The translations under genes and the position numbers were made by a program. The notes below the pieces were generated by a model. The model was not told the DNA's origin. It saw nothing but the letters and a program-made list of their open reading frames with translations, and searched no databases. This document shows, one piece after another, positions 23,624-33,006 of a stretch of 64,000 bases of DNA. The DNA comes from Vitrella brassicaformis CCMP3155 (taxonomy: Eukaryota; Protista; Chromerida), in contig CDMY01000204.1 in assembly GCA_001179505.1 (NCBI GenBank), positions 103,761-167,760 of the forward strand, in the 5' to 3' direction. The stretch's first letter is position 1. Each line of letters starts with the position of its first letter.

Positions 23624-26389
23624 ATGGACAAAGCGGAAGGGAGCTGCAATAGCACGGATCCCCATGAACTCCCTCAGGTCGCATCGGGGAGTCGACGAGC
23701 GGCCAAGAGAGGGAAATACCCGCGGGCGAAGCGCACGCCTTGGTGGATGAAGGTAAAAGGAAAAAGAAAAGCAAAAGGAGGATGTGAGAGATTCATTGTT
23801 CAGAAGAAGCAAGAGGAGCGAATGAAGAGGAAGGCCAACAGCGGGGGAGATGAGCCTCAGGCAGACCAGGAGGAGGAACAACAAAAGGAGGAGGACGGTC
23901 CGCCATCGAAGCGGCAGAAGAAGTGGCAAGGGTTTCAGGTAGTGCAGAAGCGACAAGCAGATCCGGTTCGTTGACGCACATTCGTTGGTACCTTACTCCT
24001 CCTGGCAGAAAGTCGAGGTTGGTCCATCAAGGCCGCGATGGCGAAAATTCCCAATGGCCCTCGTGCTAGGCTATGTGGGCACCGGTCAGTCAGCCATGCA
24101 GCCAGTGCCTTCGTTCGTTGCCGTCTGAACGACTGCATTCTTCCTCTGTGTCCCATGTGAATGCTCAGAGTATCACGGCCTGCAAAAGTGAGAGGCAGGA
24201 TCAGAGGACGGACGATTGACTAGATGACGAACACGCATTGTATGTCTGTGTGTAGGCAGGTGGATGCGTCGACCAACACAGAAAGGGTGCGAACTATCGA
24301 GGGCGTCCTGGAGAAGTGCCTACACGAGTACAGATTCGCCCTAAGTTAAAGACACGCCCCACCCTGGTATCTGCGTGTCAGGTGTGAGGGCATCGCGGAT
24401 GACGACTTCGGCTACCTGCAGAAGGCAAGAAGACAGCGAGTGGCAACAGTTGCTGTCGGTTAACGTCACATACATCACGGCAATTTTGCTGTCTGTAGAT
24501 CAAGTGGACGCGCGTCGGTCGCACTGACAAGGGCGTCCACGCAGGTGGGGAGGCTGCCATACGCATCCACATGACAGGTGTGATAGATTCTCTTGCCCGT
24601 TTGTCTGCAGCGTGCCAAGTGGTCGGTCTGCTGTTGCGCCTTCCTCTAACGGACGAGGAGAAGGCCGAAAGAGACGAAAGATACCGCAAACACAAAGGTC
24701 AGTCGAAAACCACTTGTTGGCAATGGCAGGCAGGCCAGCCTCCTTTTGACAGTTCTCACTTCTGTATGTCGACTGAGAAGAGAGAGAATATGGGGAGGGA
24801 GAGGGAAGCCTCGCTGGCTGCGGGTGGTCGAAAGCACGTGACATCACCCACCGAAACGCGGGGAACACTCACGGACCAAAAGCATTGTTCCCGTTCTCTT
24901 GTGTGCAGAGTTGGCCGATGGAGTGAGTGACGAGCGAACAAAGAACGGAGGCGACGGGCAGGTTGACGAGCAAGCCGAGCCAGAAGAGGAGCAGAACGAA
25001 TCCAACGAGACAAAGATGGCCAGGATTGCGGTCAGGAAAGAGCTCTTCTTGAAGCGACTCAACGACAAGCTGCCCCCGGACATGAAGGCTTTAGGTCAGA
25101 CGGACAGAGGATCATGGATGAGTGAGTGTTCCGTTTGTTTGCTCCATCCACGTAACCGTCTTCCGTCAGGTCTGTTCAAGGTCACGAAGGGCTTCGACGC
25201 CCGCGTGCAGTGTTTGAGACGCCGGTACATGTATGTCTTTCCTGGCTACGCGCTGGCGCCGGTGACGGTCAAGTCGACCTACAGGGCAGCATATGAGGGC
25301 ACAGGTGACCTCCCTGCCGCACAGAATGACCTGGATGACGCACAAGACGAGACTGAGGATAGCTACAAGCCCCCCGTGTGGATAGACAACACCCAGGAGA
25401 ACTTCGAGCCGACGGACGAGGACGTGGTATGCGATGGCACGGACAAATACTGTTTTGTTTCTCCCACTGACACATAATATTGTTTCTCTGCGCTAGTAGG
25501 CACGTTTCGAGAGGATCATGAAGGAGTACGAGGGGACGCACGACTTTTACAATTTCACGTCGAGAATAGAGGCAAGCGACCCGTCGACCAAACGATATAT
25601 CGAGAAAATATCGGTAAGGCGGGTTCTTCAACAGAACGTGGTAGCCGGTGCGTGGCTGTGTTCTTCTCAGGTCCATCGCGAGACAATCGAAGGTCAGTCG
25701 TTCCTCTGCGTGACCCTTGTTGGGCAGTCGTTCCTGTTGAACCAAATACGGAAGCTCATCGGTCAGGCAGGAGAAAGGCATACACATCACACAAACGCAC
25801 ATGTTCGGCGAACGCGTGCGGCAGGTTTGGCATTGGAAGTAATCCGCGGTTCTGCTGCTAGTGATTCGATCCGACTGAGTCTGTCGACCAAGACCAAGAT
25901 GTTCATCCACCTGGCGCCCGGAGAGGGCCTGTTCCTCGAAAGGGTACTTGCATCCAGCAAAGCACCCCCACTTTCAGTTTCAAACCTGCGGGTGCACTGC
26001 AGGCATTCTACGAAGGTTATAATCGTCGGCTTGTAGGCGAAGGCACGTCGGAACCAGTTCAATGGGAAAATCTGGAGGTATCGCCACGACAGTCTCCCGT
26101 GGACATCATTCGTGACACGTGTTTCCTATTTCTGTCTGTGTGTGGACACCAGCCTGCAATCGAAGCTTTCAAGAGGGACACGATCTTCAAAGAGATCGCC
26201 AAGGCGGCGCGGGATGGAGCGTAAGCAAGCATCAGACACGTGACCCTGGACAGCTCCTCCTTTTCTGGTGGTGCTCAGGTGGCATCACTGGCTGGAGGAG
26301 ATCAATTGGCATCCGTTTTTCTCGGAAAATTACGGGCCAGTCTCGAGTATGCGATCGAGGCAGAGAGAGGCAGACAAGGGAAACGATAA
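23624..26389 (+). CDS. PUS1: tRNA pseudouridine synthase TruA/PUS1 family
   Basis: MALVLGYVGT|YHGLQK, TIEGVLEKCL, catalytic RTDKGVHA, LNDKLPPD, FDARVQCLRRRYMYVFP, YEGTHDFYNFT, GQSFLLNQIRKLIG, APGEGLFLE. Confidence 0.95.
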
Positions 26390-27408
26390 GTAGCAGGTCA
26401 GTCAGTACGTGGGCGTCTGTGAGTGTCTCAAGAGAGTGTTTTGGCTTCCTGTTTCTGAATTGTTTGACGCATCGTCGTGTGGAAGACATCAGACTGTATG
26501 ACAATGAAATCAGTCTGGGTCCGTCTCATCCTGTTCGCCACGCATGCGCACACGTCACCACAAAACCACATGGCATGTCACACTTCACAGACAGACAGAC
26601 AGACAGACAGACAGATAGACAGGCAGACAGATCACACGACTTTCAAGTCAGAAGTGTGACAGGCGTAGGTCAGGCGAGGCATCGTCCCTGGCTTATACTT
26701 GAGCGATCTCTTTCCTTGTTCAATGCACTGTATGAAGGAGGAAAAAAGACACACGCCATATCTCACTAGAGGTGCACGTCAGAGCGATCGAATTGACAAG
26801 CTCACAACATTGCTTATCGGTAGGCAGTCATTCATCTCAGTTGTCACTGAAACCTAAGCGTCGTGACAACAACGCCAACAATCGACCTGTGCGTACACGT
26901 CTGTACTGTACGTGTCGATAAATGTTCCTCTCACTCTCACTTCTCGCTTGCTCCCCCGCCTATGCACTTCTCCGCTCTCGACACACACACGCGCACCAGT
27001 GAAACTTACGGAACTACATGCCAACTCAATCTGTGAGTGGCACCCTTCTTTCACCACCACGATAGTGCAGTGTCAGGAAAAACGCAGTTTTACATTTATG
27101 ATGCCTTTCTCCTGCCTCGCAACATGTACCGAGGTACCTTACCAAGCAACTCACTCAGTCACTAGGGTAAGCAAAGACACACACACGCACGCACACACAC
27201 ACCCGACAGCGAGCACACTTGAGACATGCATCCCCGTCCCTCCTGGTTTTAAAACATGAGCGTTACGCAGCCCGGGGATCGCATCTCTGCGCTTGGCTGA
27301 TGAGCGCTGCGCCAGCAATACGAACCTCCCCTTCGCCTCGCCTTCGCAAAGTGAACAGCAGCGACAGTGGGCTCGGCCCTCCGGGCCTCGCCTTCGTGTC
27401 TCGCCGTG

Positions 27409-30359
27409 CTAAGGGCCAGCGCCGAGGATCAGCGGGATGTCCAGATTGTCCGGCACCTGCAATTTAGCCATGCACACGTGTGATCACACATGCAGACACC
27501 CTGCGCTTTCATTGCCCCGTCGTCCGTTTCCCCCTGTACCACTTCGCTCTCCCAGATGTAGGTGAACTTGCCGACAGTGATAGAGTACAAGAACAGCCGA
27601 TCACCTGAATGAATGACGCCACAGACAGACAAACAGACAGAGGCGGTCACACAGGGAATCGCACACATTCTGCACAGATCAGCGACGCACCAGCATCATC
27701 TATGAAGTCAACTCCGAGACCAAAGTCCTCCGTCTCGACTTCGGCGGACCCCTGTGGGATACCGTCACCTCCCACACCAGCGCCAACTTGCACGTACGTC
27801 ACGCCCAACACACCGAAACCCACTTGAATGAACACCTCAGTCGATCGCGGGTCGGGGAAATCGCCTGAAGGGCAACAAAACATGCATACGGATGGAGAAT
27901 ACCACGAAATACCCATCCATTTTCGCACCATTAAGCACAAGCTGGTACCCGTCGGCCCAGTTACCTAGTACAGCACCAAACACAAACACGTAGACGTGAA
28001 ATAGGCCCTGGGGGCCGGGACAGGTATGTCCTTGTTTGTGTTTTACCCTGGAAATCGGTTTCCCTCTCGTCAAAGTCTCTGAGAACGGAGAACTGGTAGC
28101 CCAGCACGCCCGTACTAACGGCGTATTCGGTGTCATCGACATCGGTACCGACGGCCACGGCCACTGACTTGTAGCCCGCAAACACCTCCGTGGCAAGCTC
28201 CTCGTCGTCACCAACTGTGGGATCTTGCTGATCGTTGAAATCGTGCCTGTAAGCCACAACGGAACGCAGCGGAAAAGCAATGCACACATGCAGGGGGTGC
28301 GTGCGGTATTCTCTCGCAGTAGGCTTGGTGGTCGGGACAAGAGGGAGGGGGATAAGGAGTGGTGTAGTTCACCTGACGGCGACCTCAGTGTTCCTGACTT
28401 TGACTCTTTGACCGTAGTCGCGATCGAGGATATCCACATTGGTACCTGACTCGACACCACGGGCAACCACCTCGACGGCGGTCTGCCTGTCGTCCAAATC
28501 TTGATCAACCTATCACACAGAGGCAGGCAGGCAGGCAGGCAGACAGGGAGGGAGGGAGGGAGGCAGGCAGGAGGCAGGAAAGCAGGCAGATGAGGCGACT
28601 TGCATGTCTCTCTCCATGCTTTGCCATGCGTGTGTGTGCAAATGTCTGGCCGGTTGATATACTTACTCGCACACTGTACGCCCCGTACGAGACACCCACA
28701 CCGCCCTCGAGGTCGCTCTCATCGGTCGACACTGACACACCGAGCTTGCCCCAACCCGTGTTGACCGACGTCTCTCGGTCAGCAAAGCCGATACCGACGC
28801 CTGATGAGAGACGAAGAATAGACACCGATAGACAACGTGCTGTCCCGACGACCAGATGCAAGCAAGCTCACCCACGAAGCCAAAGTCGTTGCCGACCTGC
28901 ACGGCCGTGTCGCCACCGGCCTCAATATCTCTGCCCCACTGAGTAGTTGATCCACACAGAGAGGACACATGCGAGTGAGGCGGATGGATGGATGTATGGA
29001 TGATGGAAAGTCGAGAGCACCCACTGACCTGTACGGCCCAGTTGTCGTAGACGATTTCATTGGACACTTCGGTGATGATGGTCCCTTCCCTCAAGTTGAA
29101 CGGGTTCTGGGCAGTGACGCCAAGGGCAGTGGGCAGAGGGCCGAGCCCCTGTCCCTCGATCTCTGCCGCACCAGGCACCGCCACAGCAGCCTTGGCTTTG
29201 GCCGTCGCACGCTGAGAAGACCCAGTCCGTTGGTACTCGTCCCAAGCGTCTGTAGCAAACAGCCGCCTCCTTTTCTTGACGAAGTGACCGCTCCATTCGC
29301 ACTGCTCGTCCGTATTGGTGGTGTTGGGGAATGTAGCCATCATGCACTGGATTTTCATGCTGTCGTGGTCCTCGAACTTCATGGGCTTCACCGAAAAGAC
29401 GATGCGGCCAGGCGTCAGAGAGCGGACCCGGAAGTCAAGTACATCGTCTGTGGGGCAGCCGTTGACAATCAGGTGGTGGACGCACGATGGGTTGCTGTTG
29501 TAACCCTGTGGGCAGACAGCGTCACACAGCATGGGCCAAGGGTAGCGGGCGCTGCCGACGACCGTGCTCTCGAACACCATGACGCTGCAGCGCAGGAAGA
29601 ATGGGGAATGGAATGGAATGAAAAGAAATGATTGCTAAGCCCTTGCTTACTCGTCGTCGTTCGTAATAGAGACATTCAGGTCCGGTCCCGCGATGAGACC
29701 ACTGCTTAGCACGCGGCCCTGGGTGACTGGCCTGACATCCTTACCCAGCGGTTTCTTGCCGTCGAAAGCCCTGATTGCCTGCGTCTTGTGCTCCCACTGC
29801 GCTGTAGCCATGCACTCCCCGCTTGCTTTGTCACATGCACAAGTGACGATGGCGTTGTTCATGGCACCGTGGACGCGCATGTAGTTGGTGTGGTACACGT
29901 ACTTTTCCGTCTCGCTTGTCATCGTCGCGCACTGGCCATACTCTGTCGATGCGATCAGCGCCGACGCCTTACCGAAGAAACCCTCCACGTATATCGCCCG
30001 ACATTCTGCGTTAGCAGTGCTGTTGCGGAACCCTCCCCTCGGGTGCCCTTGCAGCACGGGATCGTCGTGTACGGGAATCGCTGCACAGGACACACAGGTC
30101 AGCATGATCCCTCTGTCACCTAATCCCGCGATTGTGGTTCACCCGCAGTCATTTTGGCGTCGCTACACCAAGCAACAGGTGGAATGTGTTTTGGGAAGCC
30201 AGTAGCGTTCAGCCACCGGACAGCTGAAGGTGCATTCTGGGAGCTCCTTGCGGATGAAGCAGTGAGGGTTGGCCGGGTCTTGCGGATTGCGAAGCTCCAT
30301 GATGACAGGGGAGCAAAGAGAAAGAAGAGAAGAAAAGAAGGGAAGAATACGCGCATCAT
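27409..30359 (-). CDS. Secreted protein with ZP (zona pellucida)-like module, polybasic furin-type site and Gly/Val/Asp-rich C-terminal region; 3' end approximate
   Basis: Signal peptide MMRVFFPSFLLFFLFAPLSSWS. ZP-N-like ECRAIYV...YGQCAT...YVYHTNYM...VTCAC. ZP-C-like MLCDAVCP...HLIVNGCPTD...FSVKPMKF...IQC...QC followed by KKRRR (29263-29277). Several further GT-AG-bounded exons follow. The gene is well supported; the ZP call is by motif recognition only. Confidence 0.65.
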
Positions 30360-30529
30360 TATGCGATGGAAGACGCGGTGGCCAGCAAATTTACAGGGGC
30401 ATGCGCCGTTGTGATGGTTAGGGTAAGATTGTCCACAAAATTACAGGCCCCTCCCTACCTGCCCATGCACATCCACCCACCCACTGCAATCAGCGAGCCC
30501 CTCGAGGGCCCTACCCGACAAGGTGCGGC

Positions 30530-30750
30530 GAAAAGCTGGATTTCCGGCCGGAAAGCTGAGAGGAGGCGGGGAAAGCTAGCTAAACCCGCGGGAGGCTAGC
30601 TGAGCCCGCGGAAAGCCAGCCAGCCAGCCGGAAAGCTGGATGTCCGGGCCGGAAAGCTGGCTTTCCGGGCCTCCCTGCCAGCTTTCCAGCCGGAAAGCTG
30701 GATGTCCAGCCGGAAAGCTGGCCTGTGTGCTCAGAGGGCGGAAAGCTGGC
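30530..30750. repeat. Array of about 10 GGAAAGCTGG-type motifs at about 20 bp spacing, one inverted
   Basis: Motifs at 30531, 30550, 30570, 30610, 30630, 30651, 30692, 30712 and 30740, with reverse copy CCAGCTTTCC at 30678. Confidence 0.9.
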
Positions 30751-30919
30751 CTTCTGCACTGCTGAAGGCTTTCCACGGACATACGAACTCTCTCCATGAA
30801 TCATTGACTGTCAGTGAATGAATGTCATGCATTGGCTCCAACGGTCCAACACACTCACACACACACGCAGAACCCATCAATGAATGAACGAATGAATGAA
30901 TGGATGAATGGATGGACGG

Positions 30920-31415
30920 ACGGCACCAACACTCAACCACACTGACATCTCACTGCACCCCCCACCCCCCACCCCCTGCAATCAACGAGGGTGGAAAGGC
31001 CCCCGCTCTAGCAACAGCCCCTCAGCAAAACCCTCCCTTTCCTGCCCATTCCACCTGCTTGCCCGCCACGCCCTGCTCCGCACCATGTGTGCGTTGCCCT
31101 TCTGCAGCAGCACGCTGCGTCGAGCCCGCCACCTGTCCGCCGCTGTCTCACGGAATAACTCCGCGTCGCCCTTCATATAGACATGCAGGTGGCCGTCGCC
31201 CTTCATATAGACAGGTGGCCGCACGTGCCGGGCCATGCGGTTGACAAGGGCAGCCGCCTCGTCCCCCCACCGCCCGTAGCTCTCCGCCGACAGTGGGACG
31301 ATGGTGAAGTTGCTTGCCCTGGCCTCTGTGCCGTATTTGCTGTGCTTCCTGTCGGCCGCATTGCGCAGCGCCATGCCGTCTTCTGCTCCGTCCAACGAGC
31401 TAGCGGTGGACTATA
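30920..31415 (-). mobile_element. 5'-truncated, degenerate CRE-like non-LTR retrotransposon (end of restriction-like endonuclease domain)
   Basis: ORF 31395-30982 reads AADRKHSKY...FTIVPLSAESYGRWGDEAAALVNRMA...RRSVLLQKGNA, matching the K..KY / P...E..G..G / R.S..LQ.GNA pattern at the end of CRE-clade RLE ORFs. IVH(P) lies just upstream, out of frame. It is followed by a (CATT/CATC)n tract at about 30880-30915. Confidence 0.7.
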
Positions 31416-31572
31416 AGCAGAGATCCGTCAAGCGCGGATTGGAAAAGCTGTACCTGAAATGGAGCGCAGTCGCCGCGTGACGATGCCAGCAACAAGAAGG
31501 ATTTGTACTTCCAGGCCAAGGACCGCACATTGCTGCTTGACCTCAAGCACATGCTCATGCAGCGAGACAAGG

Positions 31573-33006
31573 ATGAGCAAAGGTGAAGCGATAGGAGAGG
31601 GGCGAGACACCACCCTTGCTGTCCTTTGTATGTCCAAGGTACTCCGCCACCCTCTCAGTTTTTGATCCGAGTTTGTTATCCCTATCTACCTCTCGGCTTT
31701 GCATGCTGCGTACTGCGTGTGCGTGTCGCGTGTCCATGTCGCTGGCTGGTTGCTTATTGTGTTGACGACGAGACACATGCTAAGAGCATGGAGAAAACCA
31801 TGCACGAGGATTTCTACCTGACCTGAGGGACCCCCGAAACCGCTTCTACTGTTGAAGTGAGGGTGAGTGTTCTCAGTAGCGAGTTGCAGATCTGATCACC
31901 GTCACCAGTTGATAGCGTTCACAAAAAAAAAGAAAGAAAGAACTGGCGAGCCTCAAGTTGACCCCCCGCTTCGGGAGCAATTGGGAGGTTTTGCATTTCG
32001 AACGGCACCGGTCCGTTTGTCTGCGCCTCAGGAGGAAGTAGAGTTGTGCCCGCAAAAGGGGGGAAACAGACGAAGTGCGCGGGCGTTTGGGGGGAAAGTC
32101 AAACGTGCGTGAAGAAATAGCTCAGAGAAAGCATCCTGATGCAACGGTGCGCAGTGCGTGCGTTCCTCTGCACCGTTCGACCACAGTAGCCGACTGACGA
32201 GAGCAACAGAGTGCGTGAGAGGTAAAGAGAGGGGAGGCGGAGGAAGGTGGAATTCTCTCCGCTGGATGGGCGCCTTGTGTTCATCAGGTGTTGCCATGGA
32301 TGAGGACGAGCAGCGAGAGCTGGAGTGGCTGCGGTGGGAGCTTCAGGAGGTCGGAGAGGGCGGAGAACCACCAGCAGAAGAGGAGCAGCAACAACACGAG
32401 CCATGCTACCACAACAGCACAGCCAACAACACTGGCTACCCACAGCACCCTCTCCATCCCCCTCTGCCCCCGTCAGCACACCAGCAGCCTGCGTTCCCTC
32501 CGTTCCTGCCGCGTCACACGGCGCCGTGCTCAGCTCCAGGCGGTGAGAATGGTACCTTTCCCGTGTACTGCGCCCGCGACGCGCCAGGAGTGCCCATCGC
32601 TGCTCCTGTAGCTGCTCACGGCTTCGTCCCACCTCTGTCCAACCCCTTCGACCGTCGCGGAACAGAGGAGCGTGCGGAACAGAGGAGCGTGCGGAGCCCC
32701 CTGCCAAGCAGCGACGTCAGGCAAGCCGCGTTGCCGCGCTTCCACCCCTGAGGACCTTGGCCGATCACTCACCCATTGGCGGCACGGACACCACCGAGTC
32801 TGCGGCCTCCTCATCGGCAGCGGCGGTGGGCGGGGCTTCTCAGGCGCCTCGCTTCTTCTCAGCGCAGCTGAGCACCACCCAGACGACCGAGCAGATCCCC
32901 CATGTCGCTGTTCAGCCATCGGGTTTCTCTCTGTCGGCGATGCCCGCCGGGAGCGCAGTTGGTGCTGAGTCCGCAGCGGGCGTATCTGTCGCGATGGGAG
33001 ATGGGG
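31573..33006 (+). repeat. Repeat family copy 1 (runs into gap; 5' boundary unresolved, may extend to about 31415)
   Basis: Aligns with 33307-34746, with SNPs and indels. Confidence 0.95.
32296..32751 (+). CDS. Repeat-encoded ORF1 (acidic/Gln/Pro-rich, unknown function), copy 1
   Basis: MDEDEQRELEWLRWELQEVGE...LPRFHP*. The frame is kept in copy 2 despite a 3-nt indel. Confidence 0.4.
   Translation: MDEDEQRELEWLRWELQEVGEGGEPPAEEEQQQHEPCYHNSTANNTGYPQHPLHPPLPPSAHQQPAFPPFLPRHTAPCSAPGGENGTFPVYCARDAPGVPIAAPVAAHGFVPPLSNPFDRRGTEERAEQRSVRSPLPSSDVRQAALPRFHP

What the first reader, a model, noticed from the sequence alone, without database searches (positions are those of the whole stretch)
29263..30359. 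ZP (zona pellucida)-like module with furin-type cleavage site in an apparent alveolate alga
Seen: signal peptide; ZP-N-like Cys/Tyr/Asn pattern (ECRAIYV, GQCAT, YVYHTNY, VTCAC); ZP-C-like pattern (LCDA, LIVNGCPTD, FSV..MKF, IQC, terminal C); then KKRRR exactly where animal ZP proteins carry the consensus furin site. Established: ZP modules polymerise into extracellular filaments (egg coat, uromodulin, tectorins, cuticlins) and are generally regarded as animal proteins. Inference: a non-animal ZP-type filament-forming wall or cyst protein, by ancient origin or transfer. The usual ZP-N Cys2 and the ZP-C Cys-a are not evident.
Basis: partly seen in the sequence, partly recalled or inferred. Interest (0 to 1): 0.8.

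Follow-up and report, generated by a model that had tools for sequence, protein, structure and literature searches.

The report
Egg-coat-type ZP module in alga
An expressed, spliced gene of the alga Vitrella brassicaformis (a free-living relative of malaria parasites) encodes a secreted protein that is predicted to carry both halves of the zona pellucida module, which animals use to build egg coats and which reviews still call animal-only; here it is joined through a conserved Arg-Arg-Leu site to an undescribed domain that parasites such as Neospora also have.

Summary
The motifs lie in exons 1-3 of an expressed 11-exon gene on the minus strand (coding sequence 30359..27409, 687 aa). RNA contigs give every junction, and all introns are GT..AG.

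The ZP reading is supported.
- An AlphaFold model of the closest full-length paralogue, made with a 15-row family alignment, has pLDDT 76.7.
- Foldseek's top 21 PDB hits are all ZP modules (best E 1e-8).
- In an independent search of 48,161 PDB representatives, the top 12 are all ZP-C (Z 8.6) or ZP-N (Z 8.0) structures.
- Language-model features of the window's own protein also point only to ZP families.
- Pfam alone is below threshold (ZP-C, E 0.004).

All eight canonical cysteines can be placed. C1 lies in exon 1, which the public gene model omits.

Three points differ from animal ZP proteins.
- No membrane anchor or clear external hydrophobic patch (EHP) follows the basic site.
- Instead there is a conserved 300-aa beta-rich domain, shared with Neospora, Besnoitia and gregarines.
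- The basic run is always followed by Leu (RRL), so it may be a TEXEL-type site rather than a furin-type one.

Cleavage and polymerisation are inferred, not shown. UniRef already names two paralogues "ZP domain-containing protein". This scan had already found ZP modules, including this family, on other DNA of this genome.

The parts
27409..30359 (-). Coding sequence of the gene (687 aa, 11 exons). Exons on the minus strand: 30377-30143, 30080-29651, 29584-29029, 28938-28872, 28800-28667, 28509-28373, 28246-28047, 27964-27929, 27864-27691, 27604-27540, 27456-about 26594 (the last is mostly 3' UTR).
   Evidence: Spliced transcript contigs of runs X1, X2 and X6; unspliced DNA contigs of X3. All introns are GT..AG and the frame is open. 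The public protein P0029 is identical from Met70 to the end.
30288..30359 (-). Predicted signal peptide (about aa 1-24: MMR, a 15-residue hydrophobic core, then SFA|I). It is absent from the public gene model, which starts at Met70.
   Evidence: Highest hydrophobicity of the whole protein. The transcript contig starts 18 nt upstream. Paralogues P0028, P0001 and P0027 also start with hydrophobic leaders. No signal-peptide predictor was available.
29803..30194 (-). ZP-N-like domain (about aa 56-165; includes intron 30142-30081). Proposed cysteines: C1=65 (AWC, exon 1), C2=99, C3=123, C4=153 or 155, plus an extra pair among 153/155 and 162.
   Evidence: Model residues 4-116 of the paralogue model match ZP-N structures: 8rki_C Z 8.0 (rmsd 2.6, 90 aa), 3d4c Z 6.6, also ZP2-N, ZP1-N1 and VERL. 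Pfam ZP-N scores E 0.0036 on the equivalent exon of paralogue L006. Cysteine columns are conserved. Disulfide pairing is inferred from spacing only.
29287..29745 (-). Interdomain linker strands plus ZP-C-like domain (about aa 185-316; includes intron 29650-29585). Proposed cysteines: C5=236, C6=259 (LIVNGCP), C7=296 (IQCMM), C8=311, plus an extra pair 240/250.
   Evidence: Model residues 138-275 match ZP-C structures: 28yj Z 8.6, betaglycan 3qw9 Z 8.3, ZP2 5bup Z 7.3. Pfam PF00100 scores E 0.0041 (17.7 bits, cut-off 24.6) on exon 3, profile positions 66-132. hhalign against a canonical Vitrella ZP protein aligns C236 and NGC with its C5 and C6.
29260..29277 (-). Polybasic/RRL site KKRRR-L (aa 319-324), starting 8 residues after the last ZP-C cysteine. 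It is the proposed proteolytic maturation site.
   Evidence: An Arg run followed by Leu is conserved in the Vitrella paralogues. RRL lies within 250 aa upstream of the C-terminal domain in 10 of 17 family proteins, against 1.4 expected. Cleavage itself was not tested.
29077..29259 (-). Variable linker (aa 325-385). It carries a motif seen only in the Vitrella paralogues (AAVAVP..EIEGQ).
   Evidence: Alignment A2. Low pLDDT in the exon-3 model.
27412..29076 (-). Conserved C-terminal domain (aa 386-687; exons 3-11). It is acidic, rich in Gly, Val and Asp, and has a beta-strand pattern. It starts ..NEIVYDNWAVQWGRD. It has no Pfam family and no PDB sequence relative.
   Evidence: Alignment A5: 38-88% identity to proteins of Piridium, Rhytidocystis, Selenidium, Besnoitia, Neospora and unnamed transcriptomes. 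Pfam and PDB profile searches were empty. Atlas features gave no hit.

Best explanation
The finding is the front half of an expressed Vitrella brassicaformis gene for a 687-aa secreted precursor. The parts, in order, are:
- a signal peptide;
- a complete but very divergent zona pellucida module (ZP-N, linker, ZP-C) with all eight canonical cysteines plus two extra pairs;
- a conserved Arg-run-Leu site 8 residues after the last ZP-C cysteine;
- a roughly 60-aa linker;
- a conserved 300-aa beta-rich acidic domain, which in this family takes the place of the animal EHP and membrane anchor.

Shown here: the gene model and its expression; family conservation; the predicted ZP fold of both halves; the position and conservation of the basic/RRL site.

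Inferred: the precursor enters the secretory pathway. It is cut at the RRL/polybasic site, either by a subtilisin-type convertase or by an ASP5/plasmepsin V-type aspartyl protease. The cut frees the ZP module from the C-terminal domain. The ZP module then assembles into, or binds, an extracellular matrix such as the cell or sporangium wall, as animal ZP proteins do after cleavage.

My odds: a true ZP module (fold and homology) about 0.85; proteolytic processing at this site about 0.5; filament or wall assembly about 0.35.
For: - Gene model and expression.
- Eight paralogous loci conserve both Cys-rich exons.
- AlphaFold2 of paralogue P0028:82-362 (58% identical to the window's protein), made with the 15-row family alignment: pLDDT 76.7, pTM 0.75.
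- Foldseek against PDB: the top 21 hits are all ZP modules (uromodulin 6zya 1.1e-8, ZP3 3nk3 7e-8, ZP1/ZP3, ZPD, endoglin). They cover 260-290 columns, so both halves align in order. The next fold scores probability 0.3 or less.
- VIA-align against 48,161 representatives, run without Foldseek: the top 12 are all ZP-C or ZP-N (Z 8.6-5.4); the next hit is Z 4.9.
- Atlas shape search: only ZP families.
- ESM features of the window's own P0029:1-259: the ten best named clusters are all ZP-C, ZP3, cuticlin or VERL (0.90-0.93, 185-196 of 256 features).
- Sub-threshold Pfam hits in the correct halves.
- UniRef names paralogues P0001 and P0028 'ZP domain-containing protein'.
- The same genome has canonical proteins (signal peptide, ZP module, membrane anchor); one scores above the Pfam cut-off.
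- RRL enrichment.
Against: - Curated sequence thresholds are not reached. Pfam ZP-C scores 17.7 bits against a cut-off of 24.6 on the exon, and the hit vanishes on the full-length protein.
- The window's exon 2 gives no ZP-N hit.
- Family profiles find no ZP chain in PDB by sequence.
- The family ZP-C profile found no animal ZP protein among 1.84 billion representatives.
- hhalign against canonical Vitrella ZP proteins is weak (E 0.15 and 0.023).
- The good model is of a paralogue, not of the window's protein. The window's exon 3 folded alone gave pLDDT 47.6 and only generic Ig hits.
- AlphaFold and ESM are learned predictors, so they are not fully independent of each other.
- No EHP, membrane anchor or GPI signal was found.
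- The self-association test gave no verdict.
- There is no experimental evidence for cleavage, location or polymerisation.
Confidence: 0.8

Rival explanations
1. The two Cys-rich domains are generic Ig-like beta-sandwiches. They resemble ZP-N and ZP-C by convergence or by predictor bias, and they are not homologous to animal ZP modules.
For: All sequence-profile evidence is sub-threshold. No animal ZP protein was retrieved by the family profile. The exon-3-only model matched only generic Ig domains. Z scores of 8 are described by the tool as 'middling'.
Against: Both halves independently rank ZP structures first, above thousands of Ig domains, with a clear gap (Z 8.6-5.4 against 4.9 or less) and in the correct N-to-C order. 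The motif contexts of C5-C8 match the Pfam ZP-C profile (LIxNGCP, xQCMM). ESM features agree. The same genome holds canonical ZP proteins, one above the Pfam cut-off.
Confidence: 0.1
2. The ZP module is real, but the protein does not polymerise. It would act as a receptor or adhesion module, like endoglin or betaglycan, or as a carrier or pro-region for the conserved C-terminal domain. That domain would be the functional unit, released by an ASP5-type cut at RRL.
For: The C-terminal domain is the best-conserved part. It occurs without any ZP module in Besnoitia, Neospora, Selenidium and others. RRL precedes it in several separate lineages, including the coccidian proteins, which lack a ZP module. 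No EHP or membrane anchor, which control polymerisation in animals, was found. The self-association test gave no support (by the tool's own note this is not evidence against binding).
Against: Most ZP-module proteins with a basic site directly after ZP-C are polymerising ones (established knowledge of uromodulin, ZP1-4 and tectorins). Eight paralogues in a walled alga fit a structural matrix role. The function of the C-terminal domain is unknown.
Confidence: 0.35
3. The basic site is a true furin/kexin-type convertase site, and not a TEXEL-type RRL site.
For: KKRRR and RRRR fit R-X-K/R-R. The position, just after C8, matches the animal consensus furin cleavage site.
Against: No P domain (PF01483) was found in the six-frame genome search. 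This is weak evidence, because introns can split the domain. Leu always follows the Arg run in Vitrella. In distant relatives only RRL is kept, not a four-residue basic run: SRRLQ, TRRLG, PRRLQ, DRRLA.
Confidence: 0.35

Closest known systems
Animal ZP-module proteins (uromodulin, ZP1-4, ZPD, GP2, tectorins, cuticlins; Pfam PF23344 + PF00100)
   Same: Signal peptide. ZP-N followed by ZP-C in one module. Eight cysteines with similar spacing (for ZP-C, 23/37/15 here against 21/39/16 in uromodulin, the latter from my own knowledge of UniProt P07911). LIxxGCP and xxCxxxxC motif contexts. A basic site a few residues after C8. These are the best structural matches.
   Different: 11-18% identity and below the Pfam cut-offs. 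Two extra cysteine pairs. No recognisable EHP, membrane anchor or GPI signal. A conserved 300-aa beta-rich domain follows instead. The site keeps RRL rather than RXXR. The organism is a unicellular alveolate.
Canonical ZP membrane proteins of Vitrella itself (G000 C553, C227, C272; loci L012-L014)
   Same: Same genome. Secreted Cys-rich ZP-N/ZP-C ectodomain. hhalign aligns the equivalent cysteine motifs.
   Different: Those proteins score at or near the Pfam cut-off (27.1 bits on C553). They have CYATPS-type C5 and YCEVxLC-type C7 motifs and a C-terminal transmembrane helix. They lack the RRRRL site and the C-terminal beta-rich domain. Similarity to the window's family is weak (E 0.15 and 0.023).
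TEXEL/PEXEL substrates of Toxoplasma ASP5 and Plasmodium plasmepsin V (eLife 2015, PMC4764566; mBio 2018, PMC6212819)
   Same: Secretory proteins of the same wider lineage carrying an RRL motif. Per the abstract of PMC4764566, ASP5 matures substrates at both N- and C-terminal ends. RRL is conserved upstream of the shared C-terminal domain, also in the coccidian relatives.
   Different: Cleavage was not tested here. Whether a clade-D aspartyl protease exists in Vitrella was not established here. The motif sits inside a longer Arg run, which would also suit a subtilisin-type enzyme.
ZP-like domains of choanoflagellates, as described in the 2026 review PMC13361971
   Same: A ZP-related sequence outside animals.
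   Different: [quoted passage not shown] The Vitrella family is predicted to have both halves and all eight cysteines, and it lies far outside Holozoa.

Membership tests
ZP module (ZP-N PF23344 + ZP-C PF00100) | Bipartite ZP-N then ZP-C fold in one polypeptide | tested here: met
   The AF2 family model (pLDDT 76.7) matches ZP modules over both halves: Foldseek top 21; VIA-align top 12 with ZP-N Z 8.0 and ZP-C Z 8.6; atlas. The model is of paralogue P0028, which is 58% identical to the window's protein.
ZP module (ZP-N PF23344 + ZP-C PF00100) | Score above curated sequence-profile cut-offs | tested here: not met
   Window exon 3: PF00100 scores 17.7 bits against a cut-off of 24.6. Exon 2 gives no ZP-N hit. 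The full-length protein gives nothing. Paralogues are sub-threshold too. This is a detection threshold, not a structural feature. UniRef names two paralogues ZP domain-containing; the rule behind that name was not checked.
ZP module (ZP-N PF23344 + ZP-C PF00100) | Eight conserved cysteines (C1-C4 in ZP-N, C5-C8 in ZP-C) | tested here: inconclusive
   There are twelve Cys. Positions 65, 99, 123, 153/155 and 236, 259, 296, 311 fit the canonical spacing and motif contexts and are conserved in the family. Disulfide pairing could not be read, because no model coordinates were available.
ZP module (ZP-N PF23344 + ZP-C PF00100) | Basic cleavage site shortly after ZP-C | tested here: met
   KKRRR starts 8 residues after C8. 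An Arg run is conserved in the Vitrella paralogues. Cleavage itself cannot be tested here.
ZP module (ZP-N PF23344 + ZP-C PF00100) | External hydrophobic patch after the site, and a membrane or GPI anchor (typical of polymerising precursors) | tested here: not met
   There is no C-terminal hydrophobic helix or GPI-like tail. The only hydrophobic peak, at aa 603, lies in a conserved beta segment. No conserved EHP-like strand is shared by all ZP-bearing members. The NEIVYDNW strand belongs to the C-terminal domain, because it is also present in relatives without a ZP module.
ZP module (ZP-N PF23344 + ZP-C PF00100) | Polymerisation into filaments | not testable with these tools
   The two-copy complex prediction gave no verdict.
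TEXEL/PEXEL-type substrates | RRL (RxL) motif in a secretory protein, cleaved after Leu by a clade-D aspartyl protease | tested here: inconclusive
   The motif is present and enriched across the family: 10 of 17 against 1.4 expected. Relatedness inflates the count; about 5-7 independent lineages carry it. The protease and the cleavage were not tested.

The most novel reading that the evidence does not exclude
The complete ZP module is not an animal invention. It was already present, by ancient descent or ancient transfer, in the common ancestor of apicomplexans and chrompodellids. In this family its release is controlled by an RRL (TEXEL-type) cut that separates it from a conserved beta-rich domain, not by a furin site, EHP and membrane anchor. 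Together these would form a previously undescribed wall- or matrix-building filament system of alveolates.
Probability: 0.3. Interest if true: 0.85.

Novelty: new variant of a known kind. Interest (0 to 1): 0.68.

Why it matters
[quoted passage not shown] It treats choanoflagellate ZP-like sequences as incomplete.

This gene family is expressed and has eight members in Vitrella. It has relatives in Piridium, Rhytidocystis and other apicomplexan-lineage transcriptomes. It is predicted to carry both halves of the module with all eight cysteines. If that holds, the origin of the module moves outside animals, or an ancient transfer is revealed.

The family also offers a natural experiment: a ZP module without EHP or membrane anchor, coupled to a different C-terminal domain and possibly to a different protease.

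The C-terminal domain is conserved in coccidian parasites and has no known fold or function, so the alga could serve as a tractable model for it.

Two limits on novelty apply. Databases already label two paralogues 'ZP domain-containing protein', although I found no paper that mentions this. This scan also reported the same family on other DNA of this genome.

Tried and rejected
- **Pfam, exons and full-length proteins:** only sub-threshold ZP hits. DUF4189 and phospholipase A2 on exon 2 (E about 0.01) were dismissed as Cys-pattern noise.
- **PDB sequence-profile searches** with both domain alignments and with the C-terminal domain: nothing relevant.
- **AlphaFold of the window's exon 3** with a 6-row alignment: pLDDT 47.6. 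Foldseek gave only generic Ig domains with E > 0.001. The model is too poor to use.
- **Word-index protein searches:** P0001 found only Vitrella paralogues, and P0007 found only itself.
- **Big profile search:** no animal ZP protein. It also returned bacterial giant proteins with InlB B-repeat (Flg_new_2) domains, which match profile positions 34-76 repeatedly. I treat these as a weak local beta-hairpin resemblance, not as kinship.
- **hhalign to canonical Vitrella ZP proteins:** weak.
- **Two-copy complex prediction:** no verdict, neither for nor against.
- **Atlas features and Pfam for the C-terminal domain:** nothing.
- **Plastid targeting (bipartite leader):** considered because the 40 residues after the signal peptide are basic and rich in Ser and Thr. 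Rejected as unsupported, because the paralogues have acidic or Pro-rich regions there.
- **NEIVYDNW strand as the EHP:** considered, and rejected because relatives without a ZP module keep it.
- **Joined exon 1-3 protein:** built only inside a script, for reading.
Full report
**Observation.** The finding (29263-30359) lies on the minus strand.
- Laying contigs of four public runs on 26200-32000 showed that three runs hold spliced transcript contigs (X1, X2, X6). One DNA run (X3) has no joints.
- The joints define an 11-exon gene. After the tool's 'cut +k' corrections, all ten introns are GT..AG.
- The ATG is at 30359 and the stop codon ends at 27409. The protein has 687 aa.
- The public Vitrella brassicaformis protein on this contig, P0029 (618 aa, 'uncharacterized'), is identical from Met70 onward.
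- The RNA-based model therefore adds 69 residues. They hold a hydrophobic signal-peptide-like leader and the motif PPVAWC, which all full-length relatives conserve.

**Family.** A six-frame search of the window's own genome (72.7 Mb, 1064 contigs) found seven more loci that conserve both Cys-rich exons together.
- A profile of the second Cys-rich domain, scored against 1.84 billion representative proteins, found only six true relatives. Two are from Vitrella, one from Piridium sociabile, one from Rhytidocystis pertsovi, one from a GHVS01 transcriptome and one from a Logan contig.
- No animal ZP protein appeared in that search.
- UniRef already names two paralogues (P0001, P0028) 'ZP domain-containing protein'.

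**Is it a ZP module?** Sequence profiles alone are marginal.
- Pfam ZP-C hits the window's exon 3 at E 0.0041 (17.7 bits, cut-off 24.6), on profile positions 66-132.
- Pfam ZP-C also hits P0030 at 0.042 and an L008 exon at 0.099. Pfam ZP-N hits the first Cys-rich exon of paralogue L006 at 0.0036.
- All of these hits fall in the correct half. They vanish on full-length proteins.
- PDB profile searches are empty.

Structure prediction decides the question.
- The window's exon 3 alone, with six sequences, folded poorly (pLDDT 47.6) and matched only generic Ig domains.
- A 15-row alignment of the whole module gave a much better model: pLDDT 76.7 and pTM 0.75. Its first row is paralogue P0028:82-362, which is 58% identical to the window's protein and includes the AWC motif.
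- Foldseek against PDB ranks 21 ZP-module structures first: uromodulin filaments, ZP3, ZP1/ZP3, ZPD and endoglin. E-values run from 1e-8 to 1e-3 at probability 1.00, and the full-module hits (ranks 1-17) cover 260-290 aligned columns, so both halves align in order. The next fold, staphylococcal adhesins, has probability 0.3 or less.
- VIA-align, which does not use Foldseek, compared the model with 48,161 PDB representatives. It ranks twelve ZP structures first, then drops to Z 4.9 or less for generic Ig folds.
  - ZP-C matches on model residues 138-275: ZPD Z 8.6, betaglycan Z 8.3, ZP2 Z 7.3.
  - ZP-N matches on model residues 4-116: ZP1/ZP3 filament chain Z 8.0 (rmsd 2.6), ZP3 Z 6.6, also ZP2-N, ZP1-N1 and VERL.
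- The ESM Atlas shape search returns only ZP families.
- The language-model features of the window's own P0029:1-259 return ZP-C, ZP3, cuticlin and VERL clusters at 0.90-0.93, with 185-196 of 256 features shared.
- I put the odds of a genuine ZP module at about 0.85.

**Cysteines.** The protein has 12 Cys.
- With Cys65 of exon 1 as C1, the ZP-N set is 65, 99, 123 and 153/155, with spacings 34/24/30.
- hhalign against a canonical Vitrella ZP protein aligns Cys236 with its C5 (CYATPS) and NGC with its C6.
- This gives the ZP-C set 236, 259, 296 and 311, with spacings 23/37/15. Uromodulin has 21/39/16 (from my own knowledge of its UniProt entry).
- Cys155/153 with 162, and Cys240 with 250, would be extra pairs.
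- The pairing is inferred, because I had no access to model coordinates.

**Context in the genome.** A six-frame Pfam ZP-C search of the genome found three further loci outside this family.
- The C553 locus is a 601-aa intronless ORF with a signal peptide, a Cys-rich ectodomain scoring 27.1 bits (above the cut-off) and a transmembrane helix.
- The C272 locus gives both ZP-N (3.4e-4) and ZP-C (2.2e-4) in order.
- Vitrella therefore also has canonical ZP membrane proteins, which makes the divergent family more credible.

**What follows the module.**
- KKRRR begins 8 residues after C8.
- In the Vitrella paralogues the Arg run is always followed by Leu, except one that reads RRRRKL.
- Distant relatives keep only RRL: SRRLQ, TRRLG, RRRRLG, DRRLA. 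The coccidian proteins, which have no ZP module, carry PRRLQ and LRRLQ.
- RRL occurs within 250 aa upstream of the C-terminal domain in 10 of 17 proteins, against 1.4 expected from shuffles. Relatedness inflates this count; I estimate 5-7 independent lineages.
- No kexin/furin P domain was found in the genome. This is weak evidence.
- The site may therefore be a TEXEL-type site, as cut by Toxoplasma ASP5 (PMC4764566), rather than a furin-type one. I hold the two about equal.
- No EHP, membrane anchor or GPI signal follows.
- Instead, aa 386-687 form an acidic domain rich in Gly, Val and Asp with a beta-strand pattern. It is the best-conserved part of the family: 38-88% identity to proteins of Besnoitia, Neospora, Selenidium, Piridium and Rhytidocystis. 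Many of these lack the ZP module.
- This domain has no Pfam family, no PDB sequence relative and no atlas feature hit.

**Mechanism.**
- Shown: an expressed secretory precursor with a predicted ZP module, a conserved basic/RRL site and a conserved C-terminal domain.
- Inferred: cleavage at the site separates the two halves. The ZP half then assembles in or binds the wall matrix. The C-terminal domain either holds the module inactive until cleavage, as the EHP and anchor do in animals, or is itself the functional product.
- A two-copy complex prediction gave no verdict.

**Novelty.**
- I found no paper that links ZP domains with Vitrella, chromerids, apicomplexans or dinoflagellates.
- A 2026 review calls the canonical module a metazoan synapomorphy.
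- Databases already carry an automatic 'ZP domain-containing' name for two paralogues.
- This scan reported ZP modules, including this same family (ZP module, RRRR site, beta-sheet domain), on other pieces of this genome. My results agree with those notes.
- My results add four points: the corrected 5' end with C1, the cysteine map, the RRL reading and the absence of a P domain.

**Limits.**
- The good model is of a paralogue, not of the window's own protein.
- AlphaFold and ESM are learned predictors.

Noticed in passing
window 30527-30757: A cluster of 5-7 direct and inverted copies of CGGAAAGCTGG lies 150-380 nt upstream of the transcript start. DNA contig depth there is about five times that of the gene, so it is a repeat dispersed in the genome. 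It could be a promoter-proximal element or a small mobile repeat.
   Followed up: partly
window 27412-29076 (aa 386-687) and P0031-P0037: An undescribed 300-aa domain is conserved from Vitrella to Neospora and Besnoitia. It has roughly 14-16 short amphipathic strands separated by Gly/Asp/Asn turns, and it ends in KFTYxWES. The pattern recalls a beta-meander or barrel, but the fold was not predicted.
   Followed up: partly
G000 C553:146290-148095 (L012:2791-4596), C227 (L013), C272 (L014): Canonical ZP proteins of Vitrella (signal peptide, ZP-N, ZP-C, transmembrane helix) lie outside the family studied. The C553 ORF is intronless and scores above the Pfam ZP-C cut-off.
   Followed up: partly
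P0004, P0008, P0009, P0012 (bacterial proteins): The family's ZP-C profile (positions 34-76) repeatedly matches giant bacterial proteins. P0004, P0012 and (weakly) P0009 carry InlB B-repeat (Flg_new_2) domains; P0008 carries invasin/Big-type Ig-like domains instead. The summed E-value reaches 1e-13. UniRef names paralogue P0027 'Bacterial repeat domain-containing'. Whether this is a chance beta-hairpin resemblance or distant kinship is unexplained.
   Followed up: partly
window 26200-26580: A convergent plus-strand gene ends next to this gene's 3' UTR. It has a GT..AG intron at 26221-26278 in the transcript contigs.
   Followed up: no
window 30143-30359: The public annotation (P0029) starts at Met70, so it lacks the signal peptide and the conserved AWC cysteine. 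This probably explains why the protein is listed as uncharacterised while two paralogues are named ZP domain-containing.
   Followed up: yes
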